Virus record (IMG/VR): IMGVR_UViG_3300028558_000791
Coordinates: 186,001 to 250,000 of that record
DNA length: 64,000 nucleotides
Reading direction: 5' to 3' (one strand)
In this document: positions 9,676-49,327 of the stretch, in pieces
Position numbering within the stretch: the first letter of the stretch is position 1
How the letters are laid out: each line of letters starts with the position of its first letter
Position numbers and translations under genes: made by a program
Notes under the pieces: model-generated
Database searches by the model: none
What the model saw: the letters and a program-made list of their open reading frames with translations, nothing else
What the model was told of the DNA's origin: nothing

Positions 9676-9683
9676 TGATATAT
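9676..9683 (+). promoter_or_regulatory. TGATATAT promoter-like box
   Basis: Recurrent 8-mer at gene boundaries; here just after a terminator and 10 nt before ATG 9694. Confidence 0.6.
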
Positions 9684-9693
9684 AGGAAGCACC

Positions 9694-9954
9694 ATGACCC
9701 AGGTAACATCTTGTAACTGCATTGTTTGTGCGCAAGAGTTCGATTCAGAAGAACTCCAGAGCGTAGCGTTGTCTAAAATCAATGTAACTCGTTTCAAGAT
9801 TTGTCAGTCATGCCTTGATCATTGTGATCCAGCCGAAGACTATCGTGAAGTCCGTGAAATCATTAGTTCTTATCTTTGGTTTGCTGAGGCTAAGGGTCTA
9901 TTCAAGGAAGCTTCTGACATTTTGGATGATGTCAATTCCAAGAAGAAATCATAA
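9694..9954 (+). CDS. Small zinc-finger hypothetical protein
   Basis: CIVC and CQSC pairs; SD AGGAAG. Confidence 0.7.
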   Translation: MTQVTSCNCIVCAQEFDSEELQSVALSKINVTRFKICQSCLDHCDPAEDYREVREIISSYLWFAEAKGLFKEASDILDDVNSKKKS

Positions 9955-10101
9955 TTCTATTACGACGACTCGTGGAGTTTCTTCTTCATCGTTTGATTTC
10001 TTGCGCTCAATAGGAGGCGCCTCAAGCTCGATGTAAAGAGGTTGTAACTCTTCTTTTTTCTTTTTCTCGATTTTGTGGATAAAAGGAAAGAAATCGTTCA
10101 T
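9949..10101 (-). CDS. Small hypothetical protein, 50 aa; start refined to ATG 10101
   Basis: GGAGG SD upstream on the minus strand; MNDFFPFIHKIEKKKKEELQPLYIEL...RVVVIEL. Confidence 0.6.
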   Translation of the reverse strand: MNDFFPFIHKIEKKKKEELQPLYIELEAPPIERKKSNDEEETPRVVVIEL

Positions 10102-10139
10102 AGTCGCCTCCAATAGGGATATGCTGGAATAATGGTAAG

Positions 10140-10337
10140 ATGATGTGTTCAAATTGTTCCAAGCTAGCCTTCTTATACACTAAGAAGCAATGTATGCGCT
10201 GTCAAGGCACGGTTGTTGTCAACGTGGCCGTAATCTGTGAACTTTGTTCAACTAACGATAAGATTTGCTCCGTATGTTTGAAAAAACTTACGCCATTGCA
10301 ACCTAAGAGTGGTGGTTGCAACTGTGGTAAAAAGTGA
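10140..10337 (+). CDS. Cys-rich small protein (10 Cys in 65 aa)
   Basis: Four CxxC pairs plus C-terminal CNC. Confidence 0.7.
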   Translation: MMCSNCSKLAFLYTKKQCMRCQGTVVVNVAVICELCSTNDKICSVCLKKLTPLQPKSGGCNCGKK

Positions 10338-10367
10338 TTAGGATCCCTCGGGGTATATAGGTAAGAC

Positions 10368-10895
10368 ATGATAATCACAAATAATGAGGCCGCGCTACGT
10401 GTGTTCTGTGAACCCGTAACGATGGAAGAAGTAGGTTCTTTAATTGATACTCTCGAAAAAGAGCTAGACTATGCTAACCGTTTGGGTAAAAACGGAATTG
10501 GATTAGCAGCACCCCAAATAGGTATTGCTAAAGATATTGCTATTATACGTTTACCCAAGATTAGTTTAAATCTAATTAATGCAAGATTAACTCAAGGATT
10601 TGATCCTGCCACGTTTACAGATGAAGGTTGTTTATCTTTCCCTGGTCGTACAGAAAATACTACAAGATTCCAGGAAGTGTATATTACCAACAATCTAGTT
10701 GAGCCTCATAGTTTTGTAGCTAGCGGTTTTATCTCAGTAGTATGCCAACACGAGTTGGATCATTTGAGCTCTACTCTGTTTATGGATCGTAGCCTTCCTA
10801 AGCCGGTGCCGGTTATTAGGAAAGCCAAAGTTGGCCCTAATGAAACATGTATTTGTGGTTCGGGTAAGAAATACAAGAAGTGTTGTGGTCGCTGA
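10368..10895 (+). CDS. def: Peptide deformylase with C-terminal SEC-C zinc motif
   Basis: GIGLAAPQIG, EGCLSFP, QHELDHL; tail VGPNETCICGSGKKYKKCC is a SEC-C motif. Confidence 0.95.
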   Translation: MIITNNEAALRVFCEPVTMEEVGSLIDTLEKELDYANRLGKNGIGLAAPQIGIAKDIAIIRLPKISLNLINARLTQGFDPATFTDEGCLSFPGRTENTTRFQEVYITNNLVEPHSFVASGFISVVCQHELDHLSSTLFMDRSLPKPVPVIRKAKVGPNETCICGSGKKYKKCCGR

Positions 10896-10937
10896 ATCTC
10901 TAGCGATAACTGTTATAGAAAGATATGGGAGATTCTA

Positions 10938-11195
10938 ATGACTGACAAAAAAGATGCTAAGAACGAGCTAACTAATGATGTATTGATGGCAGATATTATG
11001 CTGCGCGTAACTGCCATTGAAAAGCTTCTAATTGAGAAGGGTGTATTTACCCAAACAGAACTAACTGCAGCTACTGAGGAAATAGCCAAAAGAGTGGCTA
11101 AGGTAGTTTTAGAGAAAGTTCAAGGCTCAAAGAATATAGAAGAGTTTGTGGCTGATTTAGAAGCTTCTTCTAAGAAAAAGGATTTTGATAACTAA
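10938..11195 (+). CDS. Small helical hypothetical protein
   Basis: 85 aa, SD GGAG. Confidence 0.7.
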   Translation: MTDKKDAKNELTNDVLMADIMLRVTAIEKLLIEKGVFTQTELTAATEEIAKRVAKVVLEKVQGSKNIEEFVADLEASSKKKDFDN

Positions 11196-11503
11196 TGCAG
11201 TTCATTACTCAAGAAGAGGAACTTCAAATTGACCTGCCATTGCAGGCTTTGTATTTTTACGCTTCCTGGATGCCCTATCATAATAAATTCATTACTATGA
11301 TAGGTAAGATTGAGGAGAAGTATAAGGATATTTCTTTTTTTGCAGTAGATGTAGACGCTTTTCCAAGTCAGTGTAAAAGGTTTTCTGTAAATTCAGTACC
11401 TGAAGTTATAATCCTAAAGGATGGGAAAGAAATAAAACGAATCAGCGGGCTGGTCTTAACCAGCGCTTTTAGAAGCGCTTTTGCTGATATATGTAGTTCT
11501 TGA
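11195..11503 (+). CDS. Thioredoxin-fold protein lacking CxxC
   Basis: LYFYASWMPYH at the WCxxC position, FAVDVD, SVPEVIILKDGKEIKRISG. Confidence 0.8.
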   Translation: MQFITQEEELQIDLPLQALYFYASWMPYHNKFITMIGKIEEKYKDISFFAVDVDAFPSQCKRFSVNSVPEVIILKDGKEIKRISGLVLTSAFRSAFADICSS

Positions 11504-11523
11504 AACTATTAAACGGAGTTTAT

Positions 11524-11856
11524 ATGCCAAAAAAAGTTGATACGACTGAAACACATGTTGAAGGTACTGAAACAGAAGCAACGCCAGCTACTAAGCCGGC
11601 TAAGACTGAAGCTCAGAAAATTTGGGAAGAGATTCAGGATCTCCCGATTCTAATGTTTGGTTTGCCAGATCAAACTGTTAACTTGCATTGTTCGCCAATT
11701 ACCGTAGAGCCATCCAGTTTATATTTGACTGTTCGCTCCAGCGCTACCCTACCATCTTTAGAGTCAGCAATCGGTTCTCGTTTTACTGTCGAATTGGCTG
11801 ATAAGTTTGTAATTGTCAAGCGTGCTCCAAAACCGCTCTTCCCTAAGAAGAAATAA
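11524..11856 (+). CDS. Hypothetical protein; start refined to ATG 11524
   Basis: SD GGAG before ATG 11524; TGATATAT at 11485-11492. Confidence 0.7.
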   Translation: MPKKVDTTETHVEGTETEATPATKPAKTEAQKIWEEIQDLPILMFGLPDQTVNLHCSPITVEPSSLYLTVRSSATLPSLESAIGSRFTVELADKFVIVKRAPKPLFPKKK

Positions 11857-11866
11857 TTGAGGTTGT

Positions 11867-12388
11867 ATGACGAATAGAAACGCACCACCTCCAGGCACAC
11901 CATTACAAAGTCCAGATGAATACACTCCTAAGGGAGCTGTTAAATCACAAGGCCAATCTATGTTTGATAACAAGCGTAGGAAGCCAACTCAGCAAGAGTT
12001 TCAACAGCAAGTTCATCAGGCTCAAGAGGTACAGTCAGGATACAAAAAGCGTGCGGCTGAATTATTCGTACAGTTTCAGCGAGCGATAATGGATAAGACT
12101 CTTCCTCAGAATCGTAACGTATTCAATGTAGAGTCAGAAAAAGAATTGCTGCAGAATATGATTCAGCTAGCAGTTGAAATTAACAATGACCCAAATGAAA
12201 GAGAGAGTGAAGGCTGTCTCACTTGGATTGTTCTTCTTCTCAAAACTTGTTTCGCTCAGAGAGATAAGTTGAATGAGCTAGAGTTTTCTATGGCTTCCCT
12301 TCAGAAAAAATTTGAGCCGGTCGCCCTTTCCGAGTTCATAAACAAAGAAATTAATAAGGCGCTTGACAAGAAAAAAGGTAGTGAATAA
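11867..12388 (+). CDS. Hypothetical helical protein
   Basis: 173 aa, SD GAGG. Confidence 0.75.
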   Translation: MTNRNAPPPGTPLQSPDEYTPKGAVKSQGQSMFDNKRRKPTQQEFQQQVHQAQEVQSGYKKRAAELFVQFQRAIMDKTLPQNRNVFNVESEKELLQNMIQLAVEINNDPNERESEGCLTWIVLLLKTCFAQRDKLNELEFSMASLQKKFEPVALSEFINKEINKALDKKKGSE

Positions 12389-12395
12389 CTTGCCT

Positions 12396-12575
12396 ATGAC
12401 CGCCAAAGAGTTACTTTTATCTTTAATTTCCGAAGAAAAAGAACGCTTCGGGCAGTATTCACAATTATGTGCTCTATACCAAGTGACCCCAGACCCAATA
12501 GCGATGGCAAGACACCAGGGGAAACTGGAAGTCCTTCAGCAGCTTTTGCGGGAAAAGATTATTACCAAGAGTTGA
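12396..12575 (+). CDS. Possible small helical protein overlapping the CHC2 gene
   Basis: ATG 7 nt after the upstream stop; amphipathic sequence MTAKELLLSLISEEKERF...GKLEVLQQLLREKII. Confidence 0.4.
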   Translation: MTAKELLLSLISEEKERFGQYSQLCALYQVTPDPIAMARHQGKLEVLQQLLREKIITKS

Positions 12576-16499: not shown

Positions 16500-16508
16500 G
16501 GGAGTTAG

Positions 16509-17497: not shown

Positions 17498-17498
17498 A

Positions 17499-18527: not shown

Positions 18528-18569
18528 ATCGATATATAAGTATTACACATTAAACGGAAGATTTACTAA

Positions 18570-19355
18570 ATGATAGATGAATTGCGCCTCTCGGTTAGCA
18601 AAACCAAAACTTTTTTGGATTGCAAGGCCAAGTTTAAGTTTTGCTATATCGAAAAGCTGCCTCGTAAAGAATGGGAATTCCATACTTTCGGGAAGTTCTG
18701 CCACTCTGTTTTAGAATACTTTCATCAACAGTATATTGATGGAAGTACGCTTCCATATAGTACGGTTATGACGGACGGTTTCAAGCAAGCTTGGGCTGAG
18801 TATAAAGACAGAATGACTCCTGAGATGAAGAAGGAGTGCTGGGATATTATCAATCAATATCTCAAGCTGGTCACCAAAGATAAACAAAACGGCCTGCCTG
18901 CCAACGTAATTGCGGCAGAAAAAAGATTCGACTTTCCGATCACGGATAATATTGTTTTAAACGGAGCAATTGACAGAATCCAACTGGATGCCGATAATGT
19001 TCTCCACGTAGCCGACTACAAAACGACCAAACATAAAAAATATCTGAAGAACGATTGGTTCCAACTCTTGACATATGCTTACGTCTTGTATCATGACGAT
19101 CCTACTATCACGAAGGTAAGAGGATCTTACGTTTTACTGAGACACAATTTTGAGTATATTACAACAGAGTTTTCTTTGGCTGATATCTTGTCGGTCAAGG
19201 ATAAGTTTGAAGAGTACGCAGCTAAGATGAGAGCGGAGAAAGAATTTCCGCCAACACCGACTAATCTTTGTAACTACTGCGACTACTTACAAGAATGCCC
19301 GGCCGGTAAGAGCAAGGCTTATGATCAACAAGTTTACGGTGAAGTTAACTGGTAA
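18570..19355 (+). CDS. PD-(D/E)XK nuclease, Cas4/AddB/RecB-like
   Basis: LSVSKTKTFLDCKAKF, GKFCH, GAIDRI, ADYKT, QLLTY, C-terminal CNYCDYLQEC (split four-Cys Fe-S arrangement). Confidence 0.9.
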   Translation: MIDELRLSVSKTKTFLDCKAKFKFCYIEKLPRKEWEFHTFGKFCHSVLEYFHQQYIDGSTLPYSTVMTDGFKQAWAEYKDRMTPEMKKECWDIINQYLKLVTKDKQNGLPANVIAAEKRFDFPITDNIVLNGAIDRIQLDADNVLHVADYKTTKHKKYLKNDWFQLLTYAYVLYHDDPTITKVRGSYVLLRHNFEYITTEFSLADILSVKDKFEEYAAKMRAEKEFPPTPTNLCNYCDYLQECPAGKSKAYDQQVYGEVNW

Positions 19356-19364
19356 GAGGAAACA

Positions 19365-20612: not shown

Positions 20613-20624
20613 GGAGAAAGTATA

Positions 20625-21897: not shown

Positions 21898-22018
21898 CGT
21901 AAGTTTCACACCGTATTCCCTGGCACAGTACACGCAGTCTATTCTTAGACTGAAAAATCCCCTAGAGTGGGTAAGATGTACAGACGTGTTACAATGCACA
22001 ACCACATCAGGAGGTCGT

Positions 22019-25000
22019 ATGACCGACTTTGTTTCATTGCATAATCAGACTGAGTTTTCTATTCTCGATTCAATCATCTCGCCCAAGGGGCTCTTCAAAC
22101 GAGCCAAAGAGTTAGGGCAGACAGCCGTTGCGATTACAGACCATGGCACACTAGCTGGAGCTTGGGATGCATGGAAAGCATCCAAAGAAACCGGAGTCAA
22201 ACTCATTATTGGTTGTGAGTGTTATTTTCAAGATGACGCTGCCAATGTCAATGAGAAGTTTCGTCATATCATTTTGCTAGCCAAGAACGCTGTTGGCTAT
22301 CGCAATCTTCTAACGTTGAACAAGAAGGGTTTCGACCAAAGTTCTTTCGTAGGTAAGCGCGTATACTCGGTTCTAGATTGGAATCTATTGGCCGAACATG
22401 CTGAGGGTCTCATTTGTTTGACGGCTTGTGGTAACGGTATTATCAGCCAGCCCATTATGAAGGGCAAGCTAGATGATGCTGAGAGAACGCTATTGCGCCT
22501 CAAGGATTTGTTTGGCGAGAATTTGGGTATCGAGATTCAGCCCAACAATATGAAGCGTGGTTCAAACATCTTTAACGATGAAATCGATCAAGACTTTTTG
22601 AACAGACAATTAGTGAAGCTCGGCAAGAAGCACGACATTCGTGTGGTCGCCGCTTGTAATGCGCACTATCTAACTAAGGAAGAGTCTAGTACTCATGATG
22701 CCTTTTTGGCAATTGGGTCTCACCAACCAATTCATTCTGGGTTCCGTCTTCGTTACCCCGTGCCAGAGTTTTATCTCAAGACTGGTGATGAAGTAAAGGA
22801 TTTCTTCACTAGAGTTTTCAAGGATGACGCTCAGACGTTTATCGACAACAGCATATACTTCTCCAATCTGTGCGAAGTGCCAGAATGGATTGACCCTAAG
22901 TATTCTAATCCATCAGGTAAGGAACTGCCACAGTTTCCGGTCAAAGATGAACTGGACTATGCTCAATTCCGTACTTGGGTTGCAACTCAGCCAGAAGATG
23001 TTCAGAAGTTAGAAGAAGATAAACTCTTCTTACGCTACCGTTGTGTTATGACGTTTGACTCTCGTGTCAAAAATTTGACACCAGAAAAACACAAAGAGTA
23101 TATGGCTCGTATTGATGAGGAGCTAGACGTTTTGGAGTTCCACGGCTTCTCTAGCTACATGCTCATCGTAGCCGATTTTATAGACTGGGCCAGAAAGCAT
23201 GAAATTGCTGTTGGTGAGGGTCGTGGTTCGGTCGGCGGCTCATTGATTGCATACCTGCTAGGAATCCATCAGGCCGATCCAATTAAGTACAATTTGATCT
23301 TTGCTCGTTTCCATAACAAGGAAAAGTCAAGCTTCCCCGATATTGATACGGACTTTGCGCCCTCTGGCCGTCCATTGGTTCAAGAATATCTACGAAACAA
23401 ATATGGAGCGGACCATGTAGCCCACGTTAGCAACGTCAACACTATTACGCCCAAGGTGTATGTGAAGGATATTGCCCGCGTTTGTGAGCTTGGTGGTTCC
23501 AAAGAAGATGCCGTTAGAATTGGCAATGAAGTGGCTAACTGCATTCCAGCAGAAATCCATTCTATTGACGATGCGTTGGCTAAAGTTCCGCTGTTTGCGG
23601 AATACGCCAAGAAATATCCAGAGTTCGAAAAGTACAAAGCTATCTGTGGAAAGTACCGTGCCTGGTCCACTCACGCTGGTGGTATTATCATCTCCGCTCG
23701 TCCCCTCACTGGACTTGTGCCGTTGAGAAAGGATAAAGATGGAGCATTGGCGATTGAGTATGATAAGGACAAGGCCGAAGAAAATGGTCTAGTCAAGATG
23801 GATACTTTGGGCCTTTCGACTCTGGATACTATTGGTCAAACCATGAAGCTGATCAAGGAGTCCGGTAAAATCGTTCCTGAAGTCATCAGCTATGATGAGT
23901 ACGACCAAGAAGCATACGATATCATTTCTAATGGTGATACGTTCTGTGTATTCCAGCTTGGAACATCTGGTGGTACGATTGATTTGTGTAAACAAATCAA
24001 GCCTAAATCTGTCAATGATATTAGCTACATTAACTCGTTAGCGCGTCCTTCTGCCCGTGATATGAGAAAGGACTTTATCCTTACTAAGGATGGAAAGAAA
24101 CCATTCTCTCTATTGCATCCAACATTAGGTCGAGCATTCAATAATACTTTCGGATTCGGTTTGTATGAAGAAAGTCTTATGTATTTAGCTCAAGACGTAG
24201 CAGGATGGAGCTTGCATGGAGCTGACCGTTTGCGTAAACTGACTAAGGAAAAGGGAAAGAATCCTAAGAAAGCGCAGGAATGGAGAAACGAATTTATCAA
24301 GGGCGCTGTTGAGAACAATGTAAACGAAGCTATTGCGAAACGTATCTGGGATGAAGTTGTTGACAAGTTCCAAGGTTACGGTTTCAATATGTCCCACTCC
24401 ATCTTGTATTCTATGACGAGTTACAAGACGGCATATCTCAAAGCTCATTTTCCAATTGAGTTCTTGATGGCTAACTTGATGGCTGAAGTCAAGTCCAATG
24501 CGCCAGACTCTAAGGGTAATATTGAGAAGATTAAGAAGGAGATTCGTAAACGTCGAGTCAAGATTGTTCCCCCAGATATCAACAAGTCTCAATTGGTTTA
24601 TACGATTGAAGATGGAAACAGATTGATTACTGGTTTGGATGCAATCAAGTTCGTAGGTGCAGATGCAATCAAGGAAATTATTGAGAAGCGACCGTTCACT
24701 GACTTCTTTGACTTTATGACCAGAGTAAGTTCCAAGGCAGTACGAGCGAATAGTATTCAAGCGCTTGCCGCGTGTGGTGCATTGGATTCGTTCAAGATTC
24801 CTCGTAAGCTGATGTTTTTGTATTGTTCTGACTATCGTAAGAAGTTACAGGTCTGGCTCAAGAAGCATGATCCAACGGTAGACCAGTTTGTTTACCCATG
24901 GCCTGCTGAACCAGATTGGTCGATGCCTGAAGTGTATGCTTTAGAGCAATATTATTTGGGAGAATCGTTTACTTGTAAACCTGCATTGGCTTATGGTAGA

Positions 25001-25534
25001 TTCTTTGATGGAGAGTTTGTGACTGTTCAGGACATTAAGCGATCCAAAGATAAGACCAATGTATCTTCTGTCAAAGGCATCATCCGAGACTTTTTTGAAT
25101 TTCGTGTCAAGAAGGAAGGTAAGTATTATGGTCAGCCAATGGTTAAGGCCGTAATGGAAGATAAGAATGGTGACCAATGTACATTGACGATCTTCCCAGA
25201 TCGTTGGAAGGTTGTGCAAGAAAGGATTGGAGAACTCAACAAGAAGGCTGAATTCGATGTAGGTATCGCATTGTTCTTTTCAGGGAATACCAATTCTTAT
25301 GAAGACGATATGGGTGTCATATTGGATCAATTGTATCATATTGCCCTGCCACCTCCCCTGCCAACCGACTTGAAAGCCAAGAAAATCAACCTCAAAGAGG
25401 CTAAGGCTAAAATGTTTGGAATTAAGGAAGAAGCCGAAAAACCTAAGAGTCCTCAGGAGATACTCGATGAAATCGAGGATACTTTGTATGATGAAGGTCT
25501 TATCGATTTGGATGACGAAAACGAGGATGACTGA
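22019..25534 (+). CDS. dnaE: DNA polymerase III alpha subunit
   Basis: PHP domain (SLHNQTEFSILD, AITDHG), GRGSVGGSL, catalytic FPDIDTDF, STHAGG, KMDTLGL, FNMSHS, OB fold; SD GGAGG before ATG 22019; no intein seen. Confidence 0.97.
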   Translation: MTDFVSLHNQTEFSILDSIISPKGLFKRAKELGQTAVAITDHGTLAGAWDAWKASKETGVKLIIGCECYFQDDAANVNEKFRHIILLAKNAVGYRNLLTLNKKGFDQSSFVGKRVYSVLDWNLLAEHAEGLICLTACGNGIISQPIMKGKLDDAERTLLRLKDLFGENLGIEIQPNNMKRGSNIFNDEIDQDFLNRQLVKLGKKHDIRVVAACNAHYLTKEESSTHDAFLAIGSHQPIHSGFRLRYPVPEFYLKTGDEVKDFFTRVFKDDAQTFIDNSIYFSNLCEVPEWIDPKYSNPSGKELPQFPVKDELDYAQFRTWVATQPEDVQKLEEDKLFLRYRCVMTFDSRVKNLTPEKHKEYMARIDEELDVLEFHGFSSYMLIVADFIDWARKHEIAVGEGRGSVGGSLIAYLLGIHQADPIKYNLIFARFHNKEKSSFPDIDTDFAPSGRPLVQEYLRNKYGADHVAHVSNVNTITPKVYVKDIARVCELGGSKEDAVRIGNEVANCIPAEIHSIDDALAKVPLFAEYAKKYPEFEKYKAICGKYRAWSTHAGGIIISARPLTGLVPLRKDKDGALAIEYDKDKAEENGLVKMDTLGLSTLDTIGQTMKLIKESGKIVPEVISYDEYDQEAYDIISNGDTFCVFQLGTSGGTIDLCKQIKPKSVNDISYINSLARPSARDMRKDFILTKDGKKPFSLLHPTLGRAFNNTFGFGLYEESLMYLAQDVAGWSLHGADRLRKLTKEKGKNPKKAQEWRNEFIKGAVENNVNEAIAKRIWDEVVDKFQGYGFNMSHSILYSMTSYKTAYLKAHFPIEFLMANLMAEVKSNAPDSKGNIEKIKKEIRKRRVKIVPPDINKSQLVYTIEDGNRLITGLDAIKFVGADAIKEIIEKRPFTDFFDFMTRVSSKAVRANSIQALAACGALDSFKIPRKLMFLYCSDYRKKLQVWLKKHDPTVDQFVYPWPAEPDWSMPEVYALEQYYLGESFTCKPALAYGRFFDGEFVTVQDIKRSKDKTNVSSVKGIIRDFFEFRVKKEGKYYGQPMVKAVMEDKNGDQCTLTIFPDRWKVVQERIGELNKKAEFDVGIALFFSGNTNSYEDDMGVILDQLYHIALPPPLPTDLKAKKINLKEAKAKMFGIKEEAEKPKSPQEILDEIEDTLYDEGLIDLDDENEDD

Positions 25535-25542
25535 TATATAAG

Positions 25543-25614
25543 ATACAGACGATATTGGATAATAACAAAATCGACGCATCAACCGAAAAATGATACGAAT
25601 GATATCGTCTGTAT
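25543..25614. repeat. Perfect 13-bp inverted repeat with 46-nt spacer
   Basis: atacagacgatat (25543-25555) / atatcgtctgtat (25602-25614). Confidence 0.9.
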
Positions 25615-32525: not shown

Positions 32526-32550
32526 ATCTATCACTCCCTAGATAGTACTG

Positions 32551-32588
32551 AAAAGCCTGCAACTTAACTGTTGTGGGCTTTTCTTTTT
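32551..32588 (+). terminator. Rho-independent terminator
   Basis: 13-bp stem aaaagcctgcaac/gttgtgggctttt (2 G-U pairs), loop ttaact, T tract. Confidence 0.85.
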
Positions 32589-32592
32589 CAAT

Positions 32593-32600
32593 TGATATAT
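32593..32600 (+). promoter_or_regulatory. TGATATAT promoter-like box, probably giving a leaderless transcript
   Basis: 7 nt before ATG 32608, no SD, directly after a terminator. Confidence 0.65.
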
Positions 32601-32607
32601 TACAAGT

Positions 32608-33168
32608 ATGGCAAAAACTATACTTGGCTTCGACGCCTCTTCGACTACTATTGGATATTGTGTATTAAGTTGGGATGAAACTACTAATGACATTTCCTTT
32701 GTCAAAGCAGGATATATCAAACCTAAGAAGACTGGAACTATTATTGAAAGAATAGTAGATACTAGAAATCAGGTTCAGAAAGTAATTGTAGATGCCCAAC
32801 CAGACTATATTGGAATTGAGGAAATTATTCAGTTCATGAAAGGTAAAAGCACGGCTAAGACTATTATCATGCTAACTACATTCAACAGAATGGTATGTTT
32901 GACCTCTTACGATTATCTGGGTAAATCTCCAACACTCTATAGTGTAATGACTATTCGTCATGGATTGAAGTTCGGCAAAGAATTACCAAAAAAAGAAGAA
33001 ATGCCGGCCCTTGTCGCCCAACATTTAGGAATTACATTTCCTTACGAGTATAATAAAAAGGGCAACATCAAGGTCGAAAGTTTTGACAAAGCTGACGGCA
33101 TCGCCGTTGCCCTTTATCATGCCCGAGTATTATCGGGTAAGGTGAAGCCCAAGGGTAAGAAGAAATGA
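32608..33168 (+). CDS. ruvC: RuvC-like Holliday junction resolvase
   Basis: TILGFDASSTTIGY, IGIEE, DKADGIAVA (D, E, D, D catalytic pattern). Confidence 0.85.
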   Translation: MAKTILGFDASSTTIGYCVLSWDETTNDISFVKAGYIKPKKTGTIIERIVDTRNQVQKVIVDAQPDYIGIEEIIQFMKGKSTAKTIIMLTTFNRMVCLTSYDYLGKSPTLYSVMTIRHGLKFGKELPKKEEMPALVAQHLGITFPYEYNKKGNIKVESFDKADGIAVALYHARVLSGKVKPKGKKK

Positions 33169-35224: not shown

Positions 35225-35239
35225 AATTTATTAAGAAAT

Positions 35240-35304
35240 TTCCATCTTTCCCTTATTGATATATTGTGATTGTGTCTTTCAGTATCTAGGGGTAAAAGAT
35301 GGAA
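35240..35304 (+). promoter_or_regulatory. Hairpin burying the SD and ATG of the sigma-like gene, with TGATATAT in its loop
   Basis: ttccatcttt (35240-49) pairs perfectly with aaagatggaa (35295-304, contains the ATG); ccctta pairs with tagggg after a 2-nt bulge; box at 35257-35264. Confidence 0.8.
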
Positions 35305-35739
35305 CGCAGAAAAAACAGATCAGATAAGTATCAGTGGGTATTACTCGAAACAGTTTGTTCAAACGATATGATGGAGGCATTTTGCAATGAGGATAGTATC
35401 TCTGCAAGGCTCAATCCGTTTGACTACAACGAGGACCTAATCGAGCTAGAAGAGCAGCTCAAGAAAGAATTTTGGAGAGTCGTAGATACCCTATTGACCC
35501 CAAGACAAAGAGAAGTCATTCGACTTTATGCAGACGGCTATACTCAAATGGAGATTGCCAAGATGCTAAATGTCAACCAAAGTTCAATAACGAAAAGTTT
35601 GAACGGAAATGTAGACTATAAGAACGGAAAGAAAATCTACGGTGGCGCTCGTAAAAAGATCAGAAAGATTATCGAAAATGATGAGAAGATCAAGGATATT
35701 CTGAAAAAGATGAGTGACGCAAGAGACGAAAAATGGTGA
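35299..35739 (+). CDS. Sigma-70 region 4-like HTH protein
   Basis: LLTPRQREVIRLYADGYTQMEIAKMLNVNQSSITKSL...ARKKIRK; no recognisable region 2. Confidence 0.8.
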   Translation: MERRKNRSDKYQWVLLETVCSNDMMEAFCNEDSISARLNPFDYNEDLIELEEQLKKEFWRVVDTLLTPRQREVIRLYADGYTQMEIAKMLNVNQSSITKSLNGNVDYKNGKKIYGGARKKIRKIIENDEKIKDILKKMSDARDEKW

Positions 35740-35769
35740 AAATTCGACATCAGTGATATATGCTGATGT

Positions 35770-36450
35770 ATGAGAGTTTATTATCTTTACAAGATCACTA
35801 ATACGTTTAACGGTAAGATTTACATAGGACAAAGTGTGAACCCACGTTCACGTTGGTACGGACATAAAAAAGAAGCGGAACGTGAAGTTCCACGAATGGT
35901 AATAGCCAGAGCTATCAAAAAATATGGTAGCTCTGGTTTTCTATTTGAGTTAATAGCTTGCTGCTCTAATCAAGAAGATACCAATGAAATAGAGACGGAA
36001 CTCGTACGACAATATGATAGTAGAAATTCTGAAAAAGGATATAATATTGCACTCGGTGGTATGAACGCCCCCAAAACCGAAGAGTGGAAACGTAAGGTTT
36101 CAGAAAAACTAATGGGTCATGAAGTGACACAGCAAACTCGTGACAAAGTTTCTAAAGGTAATACCGGCAAAGTGCGCTCTGAAGAGTTCAAAAAAGACGT
36201 AGGAGATTTTTGGCGAGGTAAAGAGCGTTCGGAAGAGCATCGAGATAATTTATCAGAGGCTCTTAAGGGCAATCAGAATTGGTTGGGCAAGAAACATTCA
36301 GACGAATCTAAGCAAAAAATGTCACAAGCAAATAAGGGCCGAAGACCTGCCGAGATAACAATTCAAAAGTCTCTTGAGAAAACCAAAGGTAAGACCTGGA
36401 AAGTTATAGATGGCAAGAGAGTATGGGTGGATAATGGACAAAGAGACTGA
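35770..36450 (+). CDS. GIY-YIG homing endonuclease with NUMOD3 repeats (free-standing)
   Basis: YLYKITNTFNGKIYIGQS, RWYGH, YNIALGG; repeated H/R-S-EE..+K+S motifs (HSDESKQKMS). Confidence 0.92.
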   Translation: MRVYYLYKITNTFNGKIYIGQSVNPRSRWYGHKKEAEREVPRMVIARAIKKYGSSGFLFELIACCSNQEDTNEIETELVRQYDSRNSEKGYNIALGGMNAPKTEEWKRKVSEKLMGHEVTQQTRDKVSKGNTGKVRSEEFKKDVGDFWRGKERSEEHRDNLSEALKGNQNWLGKKHSDESKQKMSQANKGRRPAEITIQKSLEKTKGKTWKVIDGKRVWVDNGQRD

Positions 36451-37218: not shown

Positions 37219-37233
37219 CGGAATAGGTATTCA

Positions 37234-38832: not shown

Positions 38833-38835
38833 ACC

Positions 38836-39663: not shown

Positions 39664-39674
39664 GAGGCTAAACT

Positions 39675-40388: not shown

Positions 40389-40402
40389 TTGATTGGTATA
40401 CA

Positions 40403-43189: not shown

Positions 43190-43197
43190 GGAGATAA

Positions 43198-43971
43198 ATG
43201 AAACTCCGCGAACTGCTTCAAGAAATGAAGAGAGTACAAGAAAAGATAGGCTCATCACCAGCCTATATTTGCGGAGGTACGCCCAGAGATAAGTACATGG
43301 GACAATTACAGAACATTGCTGACATAGATGTTACAACCGGTGATAAGACGGTTGATTACCTATCTCAAGAATTTTTCATTGAGTTTCGTAAGAAATACAA
43401 CGTTACTCGTAAGACAATGGAAGATGGCCACAGCACTATCTTTATCGGCAGTCTAAAAGTAGACTTCTCATCCAACTTTATGGTTCCTAACGTGGATCAA
43501 GAGTTAGCTAAGATAGGAATTAAAAATCCTTCTAACATACAGAGAGAAATGTTTAGTCGTGACTTTACGTGTAACTCTTTATTACTGACAACGGACCTTA
43601 AGCAGATTCTCGATCCAACTAAAAGAGGATTCAAAGATATCAAGGAAAAGAAAATCAGGACTTGTTTAGCTCCAGAGATTACTCTAACTTCTAATAGGAA
43701 TAGAGTTGTAAGGGCTATTTATCTAGCTTGCAAATTAGATTTCGACATAGATGATTCAATTATTGCGTATGTAAAGAAGTATCCACAAACTGTTAAGATT
43801 TCAACTGAAAAAGCCATGAATGATAAGTTGAATGAAGCTTTCTCTAGGAATCCAGAGAAGGCGGCGGAGTTAATTTCCAAGATGAATTTGTGGACTCAGA
43901 TTCCAATTACGGAAAAAGTTTATCCGTACTACATGAAACATATCAAAGGAAAAGCTAATGTCAGTAAATAA
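43198..43971 (+). CDS. CCA-adding enzyme/poly(A) polymerase family nucleotidyltransferase (class II), short form
   Basis: AYICGGTPRD, DIDVTT, RDFTCNS, DPTKRG..DI, RVVRAI..ACKLDF. Confidence 0.88.
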   Translation: MKLRELLQEMKRVQEKIGSSPAYICGGTPRDKYMGQLQNIADIDVTTGDKTVDYLSQEFFIEFRKKYNVTRKTMEDGHSTIFIGSLKVDFSSNFMVPNVDQELAKIGIKNPSNIQREMFSRDFTCNSLLLTTDLKQILDPTKRGFKDIKEKKIRTCLAPEITLTSNRNRVVRAIYLACKLDFDIDDSIIAYVKKYPQTVKISTEKAMNDKLNEAFSRNPEKAAELISKMNLWTQIPITEKVYPYYMKHIKGKANVSK

Positions 43972-45025: not shown

Positions 45026-45093
45026 AACCAACGATTATCATTGCATACAACCGCATATTATCATATAAAGAAAGCACTCCCAGAGGTACCTAA

Positions 45094-46176: not shown

Positions 46177-46177
46177 T

Positions 46178-46822
46178 ATGAGCAGACATCCAAGACATCA
46201 ATCTGTTGTCAGTAGACAATCTGACGCACCCGATAGTGACGACCACTGGTTAAGAGCGTTTGAGAACTCTCTTCAAAAGACCAGCGTACAGCCACGTGGT
46301 AATAGTTTATTCGAGCAGATTAACACCATCATGAATGGTAAATCAAAGTATCCATCGGTACAAGCTGCCGTTGATGATATGATGCAGCGTAGTGGTTTGA
46401 CTGACTATCTACAGACTAAAACTTCTTCTGCCGATGAAGATGAGCCTGTTAGTAAGCCAAAGAGATCAAAGAAGACTGCGCAAGCACAGGACCCTAAGAC
46501 TCCACAAGTAATTATCGAGAAGCCAAGCATTGCGCGTACTCTTGATAATATCATTGAGAACTCTAAAGGTAATTTATCCGTTCCAACTGTCATTAGTCGT
46601 TTACGCGCATTGCATGGTAGCGATGTTTCTGACAATGGTGCTTGGGAAGATGAGAGGCTCATTCGTTTAGTTAGCAATCTCAACCTAACTGCCAAGAAAA
46701 ACAACCCAGATAGCTACGATAGGTTTGATAACCTTGGCACTGGTGACCATTCTAGTAGTGAACGTGACATTGATCCATCAAATACTGATGCGTTCAACGC
46801 TTTAATGCCTGCTAAAATTTAA
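46178..46822 (+). CDS. Hypothetical protein; start refined to ATG 46178
   Basis: ATG 1 nt after the upstream stop; KTAQ. Confidence 0.75.
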   Translation: MSRHPRHQSVVSRQSDAPDSDDHWLRAFENSLQKTSVQPRGNSLFEQINTIMNGKSKYPSVQAAVDDMMQRSGLTDYLQTKTSSADEDEPVSKPKRSKKTAQAQDPKTPQVIIEKPSIARTLDNIIENSKGNLSVPTVISRLRALHGSDVSDNGAWEDERLIRLVSNLNLTAKKNNPDSYDRFDNLGTGDHSSSERDIDPSNTDAFNALMPAKI

Positions 46823-46836
46823 GTGCTTTGCACTTA
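46820..46836. terminator. Short palindrome joining two convergent stop codons; possible bidirectional terminator
   Basis: taagtgc-ttt-gcactta: 7-bp stem whose arms contain both stop codons. Confidence 0.35.
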
Positions 46837-47385
46837 CCCAGCCTGTTTTTCAGGTTCTGGCGGGTATTTTTCAGTCCATAGCTTGCTATACTTACAGTTA
46901 TAGCACAACACCTCTTTGTCTTTGCTAAGAGTTAGCGTTTCTACTCTATCACTTTTGCATTCTTTGCAGCATCCACCATAGCATTCAACAATTTTTCTTC
47001 TGTATGCCTCAGCATATTTGCTTTTGAACGGCTTATTCTTATTACAGTTGTAGCAAATCACTTTGTGACCACTCTTCTGAACAATATTGTCATACAGATA
47101 GTTAATGTCACCATTGATTGTTAACTTAGTATATTCATCTTCACCACAGTTACAGCAAGCATTACCATAAGCAAGAATGACGGCGCTTCGTTTCATACGA
47201 TAGCGCCCGTTTTGTTTTTTAGAGTAATCCACATCAGACTGATGAGACTTCTTGTCAGCCTTTTTGCGACATGGCTTGCAGATATAATAGCCTTTATTTT
47301 GGTCGTAAGTATGCCAATTTTTGAGGGTTAATGAAATGCCACATTTGAGGCATGCCTTTTTTCTTCGTTTTTTCGTGGAAGGCAT
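46834..47385 (-). CDS. Cys-rich protein with two degenerate HNH-like repeats
   Basis: AYGNACCNCGE..KLTI...VICYNCN and CYGGCCKEC...TLTL...VLCYNCK; N-terminal CLKC, CKPC. Confidence 0.65.
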   Translation of the reverse strand: MPSTKKRRKKACLKCGISLTLKNWHTYDQNKGYYICKPCRKKADKKSHQSDVDYSKKQNGRYRMKRSAVILAYGNACCNCGEDEYTKLTINGDINYLYDNIVQKSGHKVICYNCNKNKPFKSKYAEAYRRKIVECYGGCCKECKSDRVETLTLSKDKEVLCYNCKYSKLWTEKYPPEPEKQAG

Positions 47386-47411
47386 CTTACTGAATATACG
47401 ATCATTTTAGT

Positions 47412-49295
47412 ATGCCAAGTCTACATATTGAAAATAAAGAAATGTTCGAGAAGATGAAGAAGCAACTTGCAATGCTTGACCCTGTAACTTTTTGCGAGTC
47501 CAATTTAACATTGGAAGGAGAGCCATTCAAACTAAGTGGTAATGGATATAAGCCGTTCTCAGATATCTATAGATACATCGGAATCAAAGCATTAGAGCCA
47601 GATGCAAAACCAGTTATCTTAGTTAAGGGACGTCAGGTAGGAGCCACTACGATGGCCAGCGCCCTAGAAATGTACTTCATGGGTTCTGGATTATTTGGTG
47701 ATGGATTCCGTCCACCAATCCGTATCATTCATGCATTCCCTCAATTGGAATTAGCTGCCGCTTATTCAAAGACCAAGCTTCAGCAAATGATTAGTCAGGC
47801 TAAGATTCCCGAAGGAACTCCAGAAAACAAGGCTTCCCGCCCAAAGTCTTTCATGCAGCAATTGCTTGATCAGTCATCTCCAACTAATGACTCTTTGCAC
47901 TTCAAACAGTTTATTGGCGGAAACCATTTGTGGGTTGAGTCAACTGGTATTGATGCCGACAGAATCATGGGTCGTACCGCTGACATTCTATTCTTTGACG
48001 AAGTCCAGAAGACTACCAGCCAAGCCATCGGAAACGCGCTCAAGATTCTAACCAACGCTAAGTATGGTAGACCAACTAAGGGCGTACAAGTTTTCTTTGG
48101 AACGCCTCGTCGTAAGGGATCTGATTACCACAAGATGTGGCAGTCATCTTCTCAACAGTATTACTATTTAGGATGTGAGAGCTGTAAAGAACATTTCCCA
48201 CTATATACTCCAGGATCTGATGATTGGGAGAAAGTTTGGATTCACGGTAAAGTTGTTAAGTGCTCTAAGTGCGGACATGAACAAGATAAGCTACAAGCAC
48301 AGGAACGTGGTAAATGGGTAGCCTTTAAGAATCCAAATGACCCAGACTGTGATATGATTGGCTTTCATATTAATCAGCTTTACATGCCTAAATTCACACG
48401 AGAAGATATCGATAAGGAAAAGCCGGGCCGTCATCCAATCAATACGGAACGTGTTTTTCAAAACGAAGTTCTTGGAGAGTTTTACCAGGGCGATGCAAGT
48501 CCATTGTCTCCAGATGAAGTTCGCACCATGTGCGCTGACTTCGAGAGAAAGTTTAGCCCACGTATTCTTCCATCAAAAGGTATTAACCAATATTTTACTG
48601 TACTTGGAATCGATTATGGCGCTCGTTCCGACTTGGAGCAATTGGCCGATCCAGAAAGAGTTAAGCCGGCAGGACAGTCATACAGCACGGCTGTTGTTCT
48701 ACAAACTAAGGGCGCTCAATTGTTATCAATCGAGTTTGCTACCAAGTTCAAGCGTAATGACGTTGAAAGTAAAAAAGGAATCATTGATCAACTGATGAGA
48801 CAATATAGTATTCAGTTGGCGGTCGGAGACATTGGTTACTCCAATGACTTCTCTTCTATGTTGCATAACACGTATGGAGATAGGTATTTAGTTTCTCGTG
48901 CCCATAATAAGATTAATGACCATGTCAAATTCAATCATGAAGCATTTCCAAAAGAAATCATTTTTGAAAGAGACTTCTACATTACTGAACTTTATGATCA
49001 GATGAAGAAGGGGATGATTAGATTTCCATTTGGAGATTATGAAAAGATAGCCTGGTTGATTGAACACAGTTGCAGTATGGAACTAAAGCCATCTATTTCT
49101 AAATATGGAGATCATACAGTTCATTATGTGAAAGGTGGAACTCCAAACGACGGGTTTATGGCATTGTTGAATGCCTATTTAGCCTTTAAGTTCTTGGTAA
49201 GTAGAGGATTTACAAATAATAATCCGGCTAATCATACAGCCAAAAACCTAACCAAACCCATGGTAATGTCTGGTTATGTGCCCAGGAAGTTCTAA
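47412..49295 (+). CDS. terL: Terminase large subunit
   Basis: VILVKGRQVGATT, LFFDEVQ, FGTP, zinc module CESC...CSKC, GFHINQL, NEVLGE, nuclease LGIDYG, DIGY, DGFMA. Confidence 0.92.
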   Translation: MPSLHIENKEMFEKMKKQLAMLDPVTFCESNLTLEGEPFKLSGNGYKPFSDIYRYIGIKALEPDAKPVILVKGRQVGATTMASALEMYFMGSGLFGDGFRPPIRIIHAFPQLELAAAYSKTKLQQMISQAKIPEGTPENKASRPKSFMQQLLDQSSPTNDSLHFKQFIGGNHLWVESTGIDADRIMGRTADILFFDEVQKTTSQAIGNALKILTNAKYGRPTKGVQVFFGTPRRKGSDYHKMWQSSSQQYYYLGCESCKEHFPLYTPGSDDWEKVWIHGKVVKCSKCGHEQDKLQAQERGKWVAFKNPNDPDCDMIGFHINQLYMPKFTREDIDKEKPGRHPINTERVFQNEVLGEFYQGDASPLSPDEVRTMCADFERKFSPRILPSKGINQYFTVLGIDYGARSDLEQLADPERVKPAGQSYSTAVVLQTKGAQLLSIEFATKFKRNDVESKKGIIDQLMRQYSIQLAVGDIGYSNDFSSMLHNTYGDRYLVSRAHNKINDHVKFNHEAFPKEIIFERDFYITELYDQMKKGMIRFPFGDYEKIAWLIEHSCSMELKPSISKYGDHTVHYVKGGTPNDGFMALLNAYLAFKFLVSRGFTNNNPANHTAKNLTKPMVMSGYVPRKF

Positions 49296-49319
49296 AGTAG
49301 TCTAAATACCGAGGTTTAC

Positions 49320-49327
49320 TGATATAT
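49320..49327 (+). promoter_or_regulatory. TGATATAT promoter-like box upstream of the portal gene
   Basis: Intergenic; lies between tctaaat (49301-07) and atttaga (49331-37). Confidence 0.55.

What the first reader, a model, noticed from the sequence alone, without database searches (positions are those of the whole stretch)
9676..49327. Recurrent TGATATAT box: candidate phage-specific extended -10 promoter with leaderless starts
TGATATAT occurs at 9676, 11485, 25532, 32593, 35257, 35754 and 49320, and CGATATAT at 18530. All lie at gene boundaries, two right after terminators, with no shared -35. It reads as TG-n-TATATN, an extended -10 lacking the conserved last T. At ruvC (32608) and the GIY-YIG gene (35770) the ATG follows the hexamer by 6 and 7 nt with no SD, the spacing expected for leaderless mRNA. 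I saw no exact copy deep inside coding sequence, but I did not count computationally.
Basis: partly seen in the sequence, partly recalled or inferred. Interest (0 to 1): 0.7.

Follow-up and report, generated by a model that had tools for sequence, protein, structure and literature searches.

The report
Phage promoter box giving leaderless mRNAs
A short DNA box (tG[A/T]TATAT) recurring between genes of an uncultivated 480-kb soil phage is very probably a one-element promoter shared by its whole phage clade. It starts transcripts 7-9 bases downstream, so several genes are made as mRNAs with no leader or ribosome-binding site.

Summary
All eight listed sites exist. The real core is G[A/T]TATAT, with T preferred just before it and no conserved -35.

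In the whole 480,838-bp phage record, 32 of 40 coding-strand copies lie outside deep coding sequence (p=2e-21). Fifteen tRNA genes or cluster heads have the box or a close variant 10-16 nt upstream.

The box is kept at the same intergenic places in dozens of related IMG/VR megaphages while its flanks drift:
- after the terminase gene: 64 of 66 loci;
- before ruvC: 30 of 35 loci.

Box-to-ATG distance peaks sharply at 8 and 7 nt, with no Shine-Dalgarno. Distances of 11-14 nt are almost absent. From 15 nt on, a Shine-Dalgarno is usually present. The five ruvC loci without the box carry a GGAG-type Shine-Dalgarno (GAGG in one) instead.

No phage RNA polymerase was found. The clade has a conserved 209-aa sigma factor whose -10-reading region is conserved and whose -35-reading helix is not, so it is my preferred reader. 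Host primary sigma is not excluded.

No RNA data exist, so start sites are inferred. This is a new variant of a known kind, of moderate interest.

The parts
9611..9639 (+). Terminator-like hairpin GGGGATAAT...ATTATCCCC plus T5. It closes the upstream unit about 40 nt before box 1.
   Evidence: (dG -13.6); the hairpin is conserved in relatives
9676..9683 (+). Box 1, TGATATAT. The ATG at 9694 is 10 nt downstream (AGGAAGCACC), so the leader would be 0-3 nt.
   Evidence: conserved in L163, L165, L168, L169 and L170, but GACATAT in G003
11485..11492 (+). Box 2, TGATATAT, inside the last codons of ORF 11195-11503. It is followed by a 31-nt leader with a GGAG Shine-Dalgarno, then the ATG at 11524.
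   Evidence: no orthologue of the downstream gene was found, so conservation was not tested
18530..18537 (+). Box 3, CGATATAT, 32 nt upstream of the PD-(D/E)XK exonuclease gene (18570-19355).
   Evidence: conserved as C/T/G-GATATAT or GTTATAT in 7 relatives
25532..25539 (+). Box 4, TGATATAT. Its TGA is the stop codon of the Pol III alpha gene (21986-25534).
   Evidence: conserved in L165, L166, L169 and L170
25543..25614 (+). Long-range 15-bp stem in the 97-nt leader between box 4 and the ATG at 25637. It may regulate the downstream gene.
   Evidence: -19.2 kcal/mol, z -2.55; both arms are present in relatives
32550..32592 (+). Intrinsic terminator (14-bp stem plus T-run) directly upstream of box 5.
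   Evidence: a hairpin plus T-run is present in most of the 30 relatives that carry the box
32593..32600 (+). Box 5, TGATATAT. The ruvC ATG at 32608 is 7 nt downstream with no Shine-Dalgarno, so a leaderless mRNA is predicted. The TGA of the box is an in-frame stop.
   Evidence: 30 of 35 relatives have G[A/T]TATAT 7-8 nt before the ATG, and the other 5 have a Shine-Dalgarno instead
35257..35264 (+). Box 6, TGATATAT, followed by a 34-nt leader with a Shine-Dalgarno before the sigma-region-4-like HTH gene (35299-35739).
   Evidence: conserved wherever this gene order is kept
35754..35761 (+). Box 7, TGATATAT. The ATG of the GIY-YIG/NUMOD3 homing-endonuclease gene at 35770 is 8 nt downstream with no Shine-Dalgarno, so a leaderless mRNA is predicted.
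   Evidence: the gene is mobile, so its context is not conserved
49320..49327 (+). Box 8, TGATATAT (the palindrome TGATATATCA), between the terminase large subunit and the portal gene (ATG 49376). The 48-nt leader is strongly conserved.
   Evidence: GATATAT in 59 and GTTATAT in 5 of 66 related loci
62178..62184 (+). Variant box GTTATAT in the gap before gene 62222-62911.
   Evidence: in the genome GTTATAT occurs 13 times in non-coding against 14 times in coding sequence
10352..10358 (+). Possible weak variant GGTATAT, 9 nt before the ATG at 10368. Low certainty.
   Evidence: GGTATAT also precedes two tRNA genes by 13-15 nt
12363..12391 (+). Candidate promoter of the other, canonical class: TTGACA, 17 nt, TAACTT. 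Listed for contrast.
   Evidence: genome-wide this composite occurs 15 times in non-coding against 11 in coding sequence on the + strand (p=1e-7)
32711..32717 (+). Internal GATATAT (the palindrome GATATATC) inside ruvC. It is probably a chance copy and is the only deep-coding copy in the window.

Best explanation
**What the box is.** It is the only sequence-specific element of a -35-independent promoter class used by this megaphage and its whole clade. The consensus is tG[A/T]TATAT, with G at about -14/-15 and TATAT at about -12 to -8.

**How it is read.** A bacterial-type RNA polymerase holoenzyme reads it as an extended -10-like element. Transcription starts 7-9 nt after the last T.

**What follows from the spacing.**
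- Where an ATG sits 7-8 nt downstream, the mRNA is leaderless. In the window this applies to ruvC and the GIY-YIG gene. Elsewhere it applies to an NTP-transferase, a Thg1-like gene and about ten other gene families.
- Where the start codon is 15 nt or more away, the short leader carries a Shine-Dalgarno.
- At tRNA clusters the primary transcript has a leader of about 3-9 nt.

**Most likely reader** (inferred, about 50% within this explanation): the clade's own 209-aa sigma-70-family factor at G000:343306-343935, bound to host core polymerase.

**What is shown:** enrichment, strand bias, orthologous conservation, the spacing law, and the trade-off between box and Shine-Dalgarno.

**What is inferred:** the start sites, leaderless translation and the identity of the sigma.
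For: **The motif was recovered without a seed**
- An unseeded 8-mer scan of intergenic against coding DNA puts GATATATA (18 against 2) and TGATATAT (17 against 3) at the top of the AT-rich words.
- Copies are strongly intergenic (p=2e-21) and strand-biased: 40 against 13 here.
- Four relatives show a strong bias towards one strand: 31 against 6, 7 against 36, 25 against 8 and 6 against 24. A fifth, G002, is weaker at 30 against 16.
- The box is highly specific. Only GATATAT and GTTATAT are enriched, and changes at G, T-10 or A-9 abolish enrichment.
- There is no -35.

**Conservation at orthologous sites**
- Between terminase and portal, 64 of 66 loci carry it.
- Upstream of ruvC, 30 of 35 loci carry it.
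- The orthologues of sites 9676, 18530, 25532 and 35257 carry it.

**It acts on transcription, not translation**
- Fifteen tRNA genes or cluster heads have the box or a GATATAA/GATATAG, GTTATAA or GGTATAT variant 10-16 nt upstream.
- At ruvC the box follows an intrinsic terminator.

**Spacing law**
- The distance from box end to start codon peaks at 8 nt (33 sites) and 7 nt (10 sites).
- There are only 2 sites at 11-14 nt, then a broad tail from 15 nt.
- A Shine-Dalgarno-like 4-mer is present in 0 of 43 sites at 7-8 nt and in 86 of 135 at 15 nt or more. ATG is the start in 39 of 43. The sites cover 17 downstream protein families, about 13 after false starts are removed.
- N-termini are confirmed by Pfam profile starts for RuvC, GIY-YIG, NTP_transferase and Thg1. 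No upstream in-frame starts exist.
- ruvC loci without the box have a GGAG-type Shine-Dalgarno, or GAGG in one.

**Register**
- Two hybrid promoters place the box, or its close variant GTTATAAT, at the -10 position (G = -14) relative to a consensus TTGACA. These are G000:49378, which carries GTTATAT, and G000:169036, which carries GTTATAAT.

**Which polymerase**
- No phage RNA polymerase was found.
- One sigma factor is present and conserved at 67-94% identity in five relatives.
- In an alignment of 18 family members down to 28% identity, the region 2.3-2.4/3.0 residues are invariant or nearly so (W89, Y93, T96, R100, N103, H105, P111). The region 4.2 recognition helix is variable. This matches a conserved box with no -35.
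Against: - No transcription start site has been measured. No RNA run was listed for this sequence.
- Orthologous sites are not independent observations, so the spacing histogram overstates n.
- At site 9676 and its orthologues the ATG is 10 nt away, preceded by a conserved AGG that looks like a Shine-Dalgarno. That AGG would lie upstream of the predicted start.
- One box in G003 lies only 3 nt from a predicted tRNA 5' end.
- The sigma has a region 4, yet no -35 is seen.
- The sigma gene's own upstream region carries a box-like variant (TATCAATAA-N3-4-AGTATA), so its expression logic is unclear.
- Short contigs carrying distant sigma homologues showed no clear box, but they were too small to judge.
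- The host primary sigma could read TGnTATAT-type elements, especially those with T at -7, as at ruvC.
Confidence: 0.75

Rival explanations
1. The box is an ordinary extended -10 promoter read by the host's primary sigma factor, and the phage sigma is not involved. A phage factor that displaces sigma region 4 might favour such promoters later in infection, as in Thermus phage P23-45.
For: - The geometry fits TGn plus hexamer, with G at -14, T preferred at -15, and T-12 and A-11 invariant.
- Two tRNA promoters combine a consensus TTGACA at 16-17 nt spacing with the box or a near variant in the -10 position.
- At ruvC the hexamer is TATATT, with T at -7.
- P23-45 middle and late promoters are of the extended -10 class and are read by the host sigma-A holoenzyme while gp39 shuts off -10/-35 promoters (PMC3950348).
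Against: - T-7, one of the two best-conserved sigma-70 positions, is not conserved here: A 19, T 7, G 4, C 2 of 32.
- T-10 and A-9, which matter little to sigma-70, are strictly required.
- The same genome has a separate canonical class, TTGACA-N16-18-TAnn[TA]T, which makes a second specificity plausible.
- The clade keeps its own sigma with a conserved -10-reading region.
Confidence: 0.3
2. The box is the promoter of an unrecognised phage-encoded RNA polymerase, like the AT-rich single-block early promoters of the phiKZ/AR9 virion polymerases.
For: - The promoter is a single short AT-rich block with the start a fixed few nt downstream.
- AR9 early promoters are AAATATATATTAT-N6-G(+1) (PMC5312081).
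- Many large ORFs of the genome have no annotation.
Against: - There is no Rpb2 domain.
- No DFDGD-type beta-prime motif and no T7-like motifs occur in the six-frame translations of G000 or G003.
- No polymerase PHROG was found among the 11 largest ORFs tested.
- Two tRNA promoters combine the box or a near variant with a bacterial -35 at canonical spacing.
Confidence: 0.05
3. The box acts at the RNA level rather than as a promoter. It would be an AU-rich ribosome-recruiting element standing in for the Shine-Dalgarno 8 nt before AUG, or an RNA-processing site.
For: The spacing to ATG is fixed at 7-8 nt and no Shine-Dalgarno is present.
Against: - The same box precedes tRNA genes by 10-16 nt.
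- It also precedes genes that have their own Shine-Dalgarno at 15-50 nt.
- At ruvC it follows an intrinsic terminator, so a new transcript must begin within about 15 nt of the ATG.
- It is almost absent from tight intra-operon junctions.
Confidence: 0.04
4. The box is an operator for a DNA-binding regulator, for example the highly conserved sigma-4-like HTH protein at 35299-35739, and not the core promoter itself.
For: - That HTH gene is flanked by two boxes and is 85-100% identical across most of the clade (61% and 52% in the two most distant loci).
- One box is a perfect 10-bp palindrome (49319-49328).
Against: - Most boxes are not palindromic and the flanks are not conserved.
- Nothing else is conserved nearby that could act as the promoter.
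- The strict 7-8 nt spacing to leaderless ATGs and the -10 register in the hybrid promoters fit a core element.
Confidence: 0.05

Closest known systems
Extended -10 (TGnTATAAT) promoters without a -35, as used for the middle and late genes of Thermus phage P23-45 (PMC3950348)
   Same: - A single element at the -10 position.
- G at -14 with T preferred at -15.
- T-12 and A-11 present.
- No -35.
- Used by a phage that depends on host core polymerase.
   Different: - T-7 is not conserved.
- T-10, A-9 and T-8 are strictly required.
- GTTATAT is allowed.
- The clade carries its own sigma.
- No homologue of gp39 or gp76 has been identified.
T4-type late promoters, TATAAATA at -13 to -6, read by the phage sigma gp55 with gp33 and gp45 (PMC1524935)
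   Same: - A short, highly conserved AT-rich box.
- No -35.
- Phage-specified recognition on host core polymerase.
- The box is conserved across a phage clade.
   Different: - The sequence differs. TATAAATA is not enriched here: 2 intergenic against 7 coding.
- The candidate sigma here has regions 2 and 4 and is nearest to group 1/2 sigmas.
- The box serves tRNA and DNA-metabolism genes as well as the portal gene.
Early promoters of the phiKZ/AR9 virion RNA polymerases, AAATATATATTAT-N6-G(+1) (PMC5312081)
   Same: An AT-rich single block containing ATATAT, with the start a fixed 6-7 nt downstream.
   Different: - Those promoters are read by phage multisubunit polymerases, and none is detectable here.
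- AR9 leaders are 26-491 nt long, not leaderless.
Leaderless mRNAs with a -10 element at a fixed distance from the start codon, as in lambda cI from PRM and in many Actinobacteria, Deinococcus-Thermus and archaea (from general knowledge)
   Same: - The ATG lies 7-8 nt after the -10-like element.
- No Shine-Dalgarno is present.
- AUG is strongly preferred.
   Different: - Here this is a feature of one promoter class of a megaphage clade that otherwise uses Shine-Dalgarno sequences.
- The host is unknown.
Sigma-28/SigD -10 element GCCGATAA/T and the SPO1 gp33-34 late -10 element GATATT (recalled from memory, not checked in the literature here)
   Same: They share the GATAT/CGATAT string.
   Different: - Those promoters need a -35 (TAAA or CGTTAGA), and none is found here.
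- The register implied by the leaderless starts differs by 3-4 nt.

Membership tests
Extended -10 sigma-70-class promoter | A TG motif one base upstream of the -10 hexamer | tested here: met
   G is required: AATATAT, CATATAT and TATATAT are not enriched or only weakly so. T precedes G in 18 of 32 sites in G000 and 15 of 29 in G003.
Extended -10 sigma-70-class promoter | A -10 hexamer of TATAAT type with A-11 and T-7 as the best-conserved positions | tested here: not met
   A-11 is invariant, but -7 is A 19, T 7, G 4, C 2 of 32. T-10 and A-9 are strictly required instead.
Extended -10 sigma-70-class promoter | No -35 element is required | tested here: met
   No position from -45 to -4 exceeds 0.45 bit.
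Extended -10 sigma-70-class promoter | Recognition by the primary sigma (regions 2.4 and 3.0) of the host | not testable with these tools
   The host is unknown and no biochemistry is available.
T4-type late promoter (gp55 class) | TATAAATA consensus at -13 to -6 | tested here: not met
   TATAAATA occurs 2 times in intergenic and 7 times in coding sequence on the + strand.
T4-type late promoter (gp55 class) | gp55, gp33 and sliding-clamp co-activator genes | not tested
   Only Pfam Sigma70_r2 and r4 were searched. gp55-like proteins escape these models.
Promoter of a phage-encoded RNA polymerase (phiKZ/AR9, T7 or N4 types) | The genome encodes such a polymerase | tested here: not met
   - PF00562 gave no hit.
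- No DFDGD or T7 motif A/C was found in six frames of G000 and G003.
- The large ORFs gave no polymerase PHROG.
- The PF00940 search had no valid control.
Leaderless mRNA | The start codon lies at or within about 1-2 nt of the transcription start | not testable with these tools
   This is inferred from the 7-8 nt box-to-ATG spacing. No RNA runs were listed.
Leaderless mRNA | No Shine-Dalgarno, and AUG as the start codon | tested here: met
   None of 43 sites has a Shine-Dalgarno-like 4-mer and 39 of 43 start with ATG. ruvC loci without the box have a Shine-Dalgarno.
Sigma-28/FliA-type promoter | A TAAA -35 element 15 nt upstream of a GCCGATAA -10 element | tested here: not met
   There is no upstream conservation. 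C precedes GATAT in only 7 of 32 sites.

The most novel reading that the evidence does not exclude
A large, uncultivated lineage of soil and rhizosphere megaphages may run a multi-tier transcription programme on host core polymerase with no polymerase of its own.

- A minimal phage sigma, consisting of sigma-2, a stub of region 3.0 and a degenerate sigma-4, reads a -35-less G[A/T]TATAT box.
- That box fires tRNA operons and a sizeable set of truly leaderless mRNAs.
- A second, unrelated box (GCTCCCATTCAC, or xCCCATC in relatives) drives about 55 small genes in a high-GC terminal block.
- Canonical -35/-10 promoters serve the host sigma.
Probability: 0.35. Interest if true: 0.6.

Novelty: new variant of a known kind. 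Interest (0 to 1): 0.5.

Why it matters
Megaphages of 350-480 kb are known almost only from metagenomes, and how they schedule gene expression is unknown.

- **A usable promoter rule.** A clade-wide, easily recognised promoter box gives transcription-unit boundaries and corrected start codons for hundreds of genomes that cannot be cultured.
- **A testable pairing.** The work names one sigma and one box that can be tested entirely in vitro with synthetic DNA and any bacterial core polymerase.
- **Leaderless translation.** The box-or-Shine-Dalgarno alternation at the same gene (ruvC) is a clean natural experiment. It suggests these phages rely on leaderless translation for part of their programme, which also constrains what kind of host they infect.
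- **Annotation.** Gene callers that require a Shine-Dalgarno or prefer the longest ORF will mis-start such genes.

Tried and rejected
- **RNA evidence.** Two searches for sequencing runs listed only five DNA metagenome runs and no RNA run. Read laying was therefore not used, because DNA contigs cannot show start sites.
- **Identity of the phage.**
  - Megablast of 10 kb against GenBank phages found nothing.
  - The terminase is at most 27% identical to isolates.
  - The sigma and the sigma-4-like protein have no homologue in isolates.
- **Host.** A terminase scan of 185,579 species genomes found nothing, so the host remains unknown.
- **Terminator hypothesis.** Only 2 of 32 boxes follow a hairpin plus T-run. 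Rejected.
- **Palindromic operator hypothesis.** Only the portal site is palindromic. Rejected.
- **Phage polymerase.** Domain, motif and PHROG searches were all negative.
- **Does the box travel with the sigma family outside this clade?**
  - An exhaustive search found about 200 clusters of ~210-aa homologues.
  - The contigs that could be fetched are 1-16 kb of tightly packed operons with the same synteny (Zn-ribbon, sigma, ribonucleotide reductase).
  - They show no clear box pattern, so the result is inconclusive.
  - Scans of IMG/VR with three distant homologues found nothing.
- **Literature.** A search for the motif string returned only primer hits.
- **Known RNA families.** Rfam has no family in the window.
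- **Built-in sigma-70 scan.** It does not pick up the boxes because it demands a -35 and T at -7.

Full report
**Setting**

The window is G000:C1:186001-250000 of a 480,838-bp IMG/VR virus record from a rhizosphere metagenome. Nearly all genes are on the + strand.

Genes identified in the window:
- topoisomerase I;
- an SbcC-like ATPase;
- a PD-(D/E)XK exonuclease;
- Pol III alpha;
- RuvC;
- a GIY-YIG/NUMOD3 endonuclease;
- the terminase large subunit;
- the portal protein.

The genome also carries 57 tRNA genes and a tmRNA. No isolated phage is close. Megablast found nothing, and the terminase is at most 27% identical to any GenBank phage. IMG/VR, however, holds a large clade of relatives of 200-450 kb.

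**Observation**

| Measure | Result |
|---|---|
| TGATATAT in the window | 9 matches against 2.5 expected |
| TGATATAT in the genome | 20 forward, 4 reverse; reversed-pattern control 3 and 6 |
| Unseeded 8-mer scan, intergenic against coding | GATATATA 18 against 2; TGATATAT 17 against 3 |
| Core GATATAT | 32 non-coding against 8 coding |
| Only other enriched variant, GTTATAT | 13 against 14 |
| Copies outside deep coding (13% expected) | 32 of 40, p=2e-21 |

- Single substitutions at the G, at T-10 or at A-9 abolish enrichment.
- T precedes the G in 18 of 32 sites and A follows the box in 19 of 32.
- Nothing is conserved from -45 to -4.
- Only two boxes, both in the window, follow a terminator.

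**Comparative evidence**

- **Terminase-portal gap.** In 66 related loci (terminase 65-94% identical), 59 have GATATAT and 5 have GTTATAT. The sequence between the stop codon and the box varies freely.
- **Upstream of ruvC.** In 35 loci (RuvC 46-91% identical), 30 keep G[A/T]TATAT 7-8 nt before the ATG, usually after a hairpin and T-run, with no Shine-Dalgarno.
- **The five loci without the box.** There ruvC follows another gene, and they have a GGAG-type Shine-Dalgarno, or GAGG in one, instead.
- **Other window sites.** The orthologues of 9676, 18530, 25532 and 35257 also carry the box.
- **Whole relatives.** Four of five show a strong bias towards one strand and the fifth a weaker one.

**The box acts on transcription**

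Fifteen tRNA genes or cluster heads in G000 and G003 have the box, or a GATATAA/GATATAG, GTTATAA or GGTATAT variant, 10-16 nt before the mature 5' end. This excludes a purely translational signal.

Two of the tRNA promoters, at G000:49378 and 169036, have a consensus TTGACA 16-17 nt upstream of TATATT or TATAAT. The first carries the box as GTTATAT and the second the close variant GTTATAAT. Both put the G at -14 and the TATAT at -12 to -8.

**Spacing and leaderless starts**

I pooled G000, the complete relative G003 (452 kb, fetched) and 126 loci. I then measured the distance from the box end to the first start codon that opens an ORF of at least 60 codons.

| Distance from box end | Sites | Shine-Dalgarno-like 4-mer |
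|---|---|---|
| 8 nt | 33 | 0 of 43 (7 and 8 nt together) |
| 7 nt | 10 | see above |
| 11-14 nt | 2 | not assessed |
| 15 nt or more | 135 | 86 of 135 |

- In the 7-8 nt class, ATG is the start in 39 of 43 sites.
- The downstream proteins fall into 17 families, about 13 after GTG/TTG false starts are removed.
- The start codons of RuvC, GIY-YIG, an NTP-transferase and a Thg1-like protein are confirmed. Pfam profiles begin at residues 4-7 of these proteins.
- No in-frame upstream start exists for these genes.

This is the pattern expected if transcription begins 7-9 nt after the box:
- The ATG is at the 5' end of the transcript at 7-8 nt.
- A leader of 3-6 nt would be useless, which explains the gap.
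- A leader long enough for a Shine-Dalgarno begins at about 15 nt.

The orthologous sites are not independent, so the counts overstate n. The family count and the box-or-Shine-Dalgarno swap at ruvC do not depend on that.

**Who reads the box**

No phage RNA polymerase was found:
- no Rpb2 domain;
- no DFDGD or T7-type motifs in the six-frame translations of G000 and G003;
- no polymerase PHROG among the largest ORFs tested.

The genome encodes one sigma-70-family protein of 209 aa.
- It is 67-94% identical in five relatives.
- Its nearest solved relatives are group 1/2 sigmas.
- It aligns through regions 2.1-2.4 and the first turn of 3.0, lacks most of region 3, and ends with region 4.
- An exhaustive search found about 200 clusters of such ~210-aa proteins.
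- In an alignment of 18 members down to 28% identity, the -10-reading segment is invariant or nearly so (W89, Y93, T96, R100, N103, H105, P111). The region 4.2 recognition helix is not conserved.
- That matches a conserved -10-like box with no -35.

The same genome also has a separate canonical class, TTGACA-N16-18-TAnn[TA]T. It occurs 15 times in intergenic and 11 times in coding sequence on the + strand (p=1e-7), against 2 intergenic and 6 coding, unenriched, on the - strand. The box class differs from sigma-70 rules in not conserving T-7 and in strictly requiring T-10 and A-9.

The host primary sigma acting on an extended -10, as in Thermus phage P23-45 (PMC3950348), remains a serious rival. 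The attempt to follow the sigma family into more distant phages was inconclusive, because the available contigs are too short.

**Comparison with known systems**

- The geometry is that of extended -10 promoters and of T4 late promoters (TATAAATA at -13 to -6, read by gp55; PMC1524935).
- It also resembles the single AT-rich block of AR9/phiKZ virion-polymerase promoters (PMC5312081).
- The sequence, the strict positions and the systematic coupling to leaderless starts are particular to this clade.
- I found no description of the motif in the literature.
- I rate it a new variant of a known kind.

**Limits**

- There are no RNA data and the host is unknown.
- At site 9676 and its orthologues, a conserved AGG lies immediately after the box with the ATG at 10 nt. 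This does not fit the simple model well.
- One G003 box sits 3 nt from a predicted tRNA 5' end.

Noticed in passing
G000:C1:419,979-478,484 and 9040, 17350, 22736 (outside the window): A high-GC block (0.50-0.59 against 0.42 elsewhere) of small + strand genes. It carries about 55 copies of (G)GCTCCCATTCAC(GG), mostly in the gaps between genes and, where an ATG follows, about 12-30 nt upstream of its Shine-Dalgarno. The count is 60 forward and 0 reverse for CTCCCATTCA. The relative G003 has a comparable high-GC terminal region with an xCCCATC box. This looks like a second, unrelated promoter-like class whose reader is unknown. It is arguably as interesting as the finding itself.
   Followed up: partly
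G000:35598, 62224, 72822, 169043 (variants at 43320, 121730, 171139); sigma-gene upstream G000:343256 and L097-L101: A CTATCAATA(A) element lies 2-6 nt upstream of the box at tRNA-cluster promoters. It is conserved upstream of the sigma gene in six phages as TATCAATAA-N3-4-AGTATA(A/C). It may be an activator site or a distinct sub-class of promoter.
   Followed up: partly
G000:9,194-175,530 (tRNA region); suppressor-type tRNAs at 50073, 172924, 173183: The genome has 57 tRNA genes and a tmRNA (tag ANDNAFAMAA). Two tRNAs have anticodon CTA and one has TTA, although the window's genes read open in the standard code. The box at G000:171139 is followed at 8 nt by ATG-AGT-TAT-CTA-TAG, a 4-codon ORF that ends in TAG.
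   Followed up: no
window 25543-25614: The 97-nt leader after box 4 folds into a 15-bp long-range stem (-19.2 kcal/mol, z -2.55). Both arms are kept in relatives. It matches no Rfam family.
   Followed up: partly
window 49328-49375: The portal-gene leader is strongly conserved in about 60 relatives (CATATTTAGWGTAT...TAGTAGAGGGTATAGTGGAAC...GAGG), far more than other intergenic DNA. It may be a translational control element.
   Followed up: no
window 35299-35739: A 146-aa protein with a sigma-region-4/LuxR-type HTH lies between two boxes. It is among the most conserved proteins of the clade, at 85-100% identity in relatives whose terminase is 71-94% identical. It has no homologue in GenBank phages.
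   Followed up: partly
sigma locus, G000:342327-346503; L185-L191: The gene order Zn-ribbon protein, sigma, ribonucleotide reductase is kept in contigs whose sigma is only 28-39% identical to this one. One 90-kb contig also carries TubZ, UvsW and DnaB genes. The ~210-aa sigma therefore marks a much wider phage lineage.
   Followed up: partly
G003 (IMG/VR 3300035661_000001), about 110.7 kb into the stretch 400001-451956 joined to 1-80000, i.e. near G003:58.8 kb: There is a long run of GATGAG/GATGAT repeats (an acidic D/E repeat if coding) in the high-GC region of the relative.
   Followed up: no
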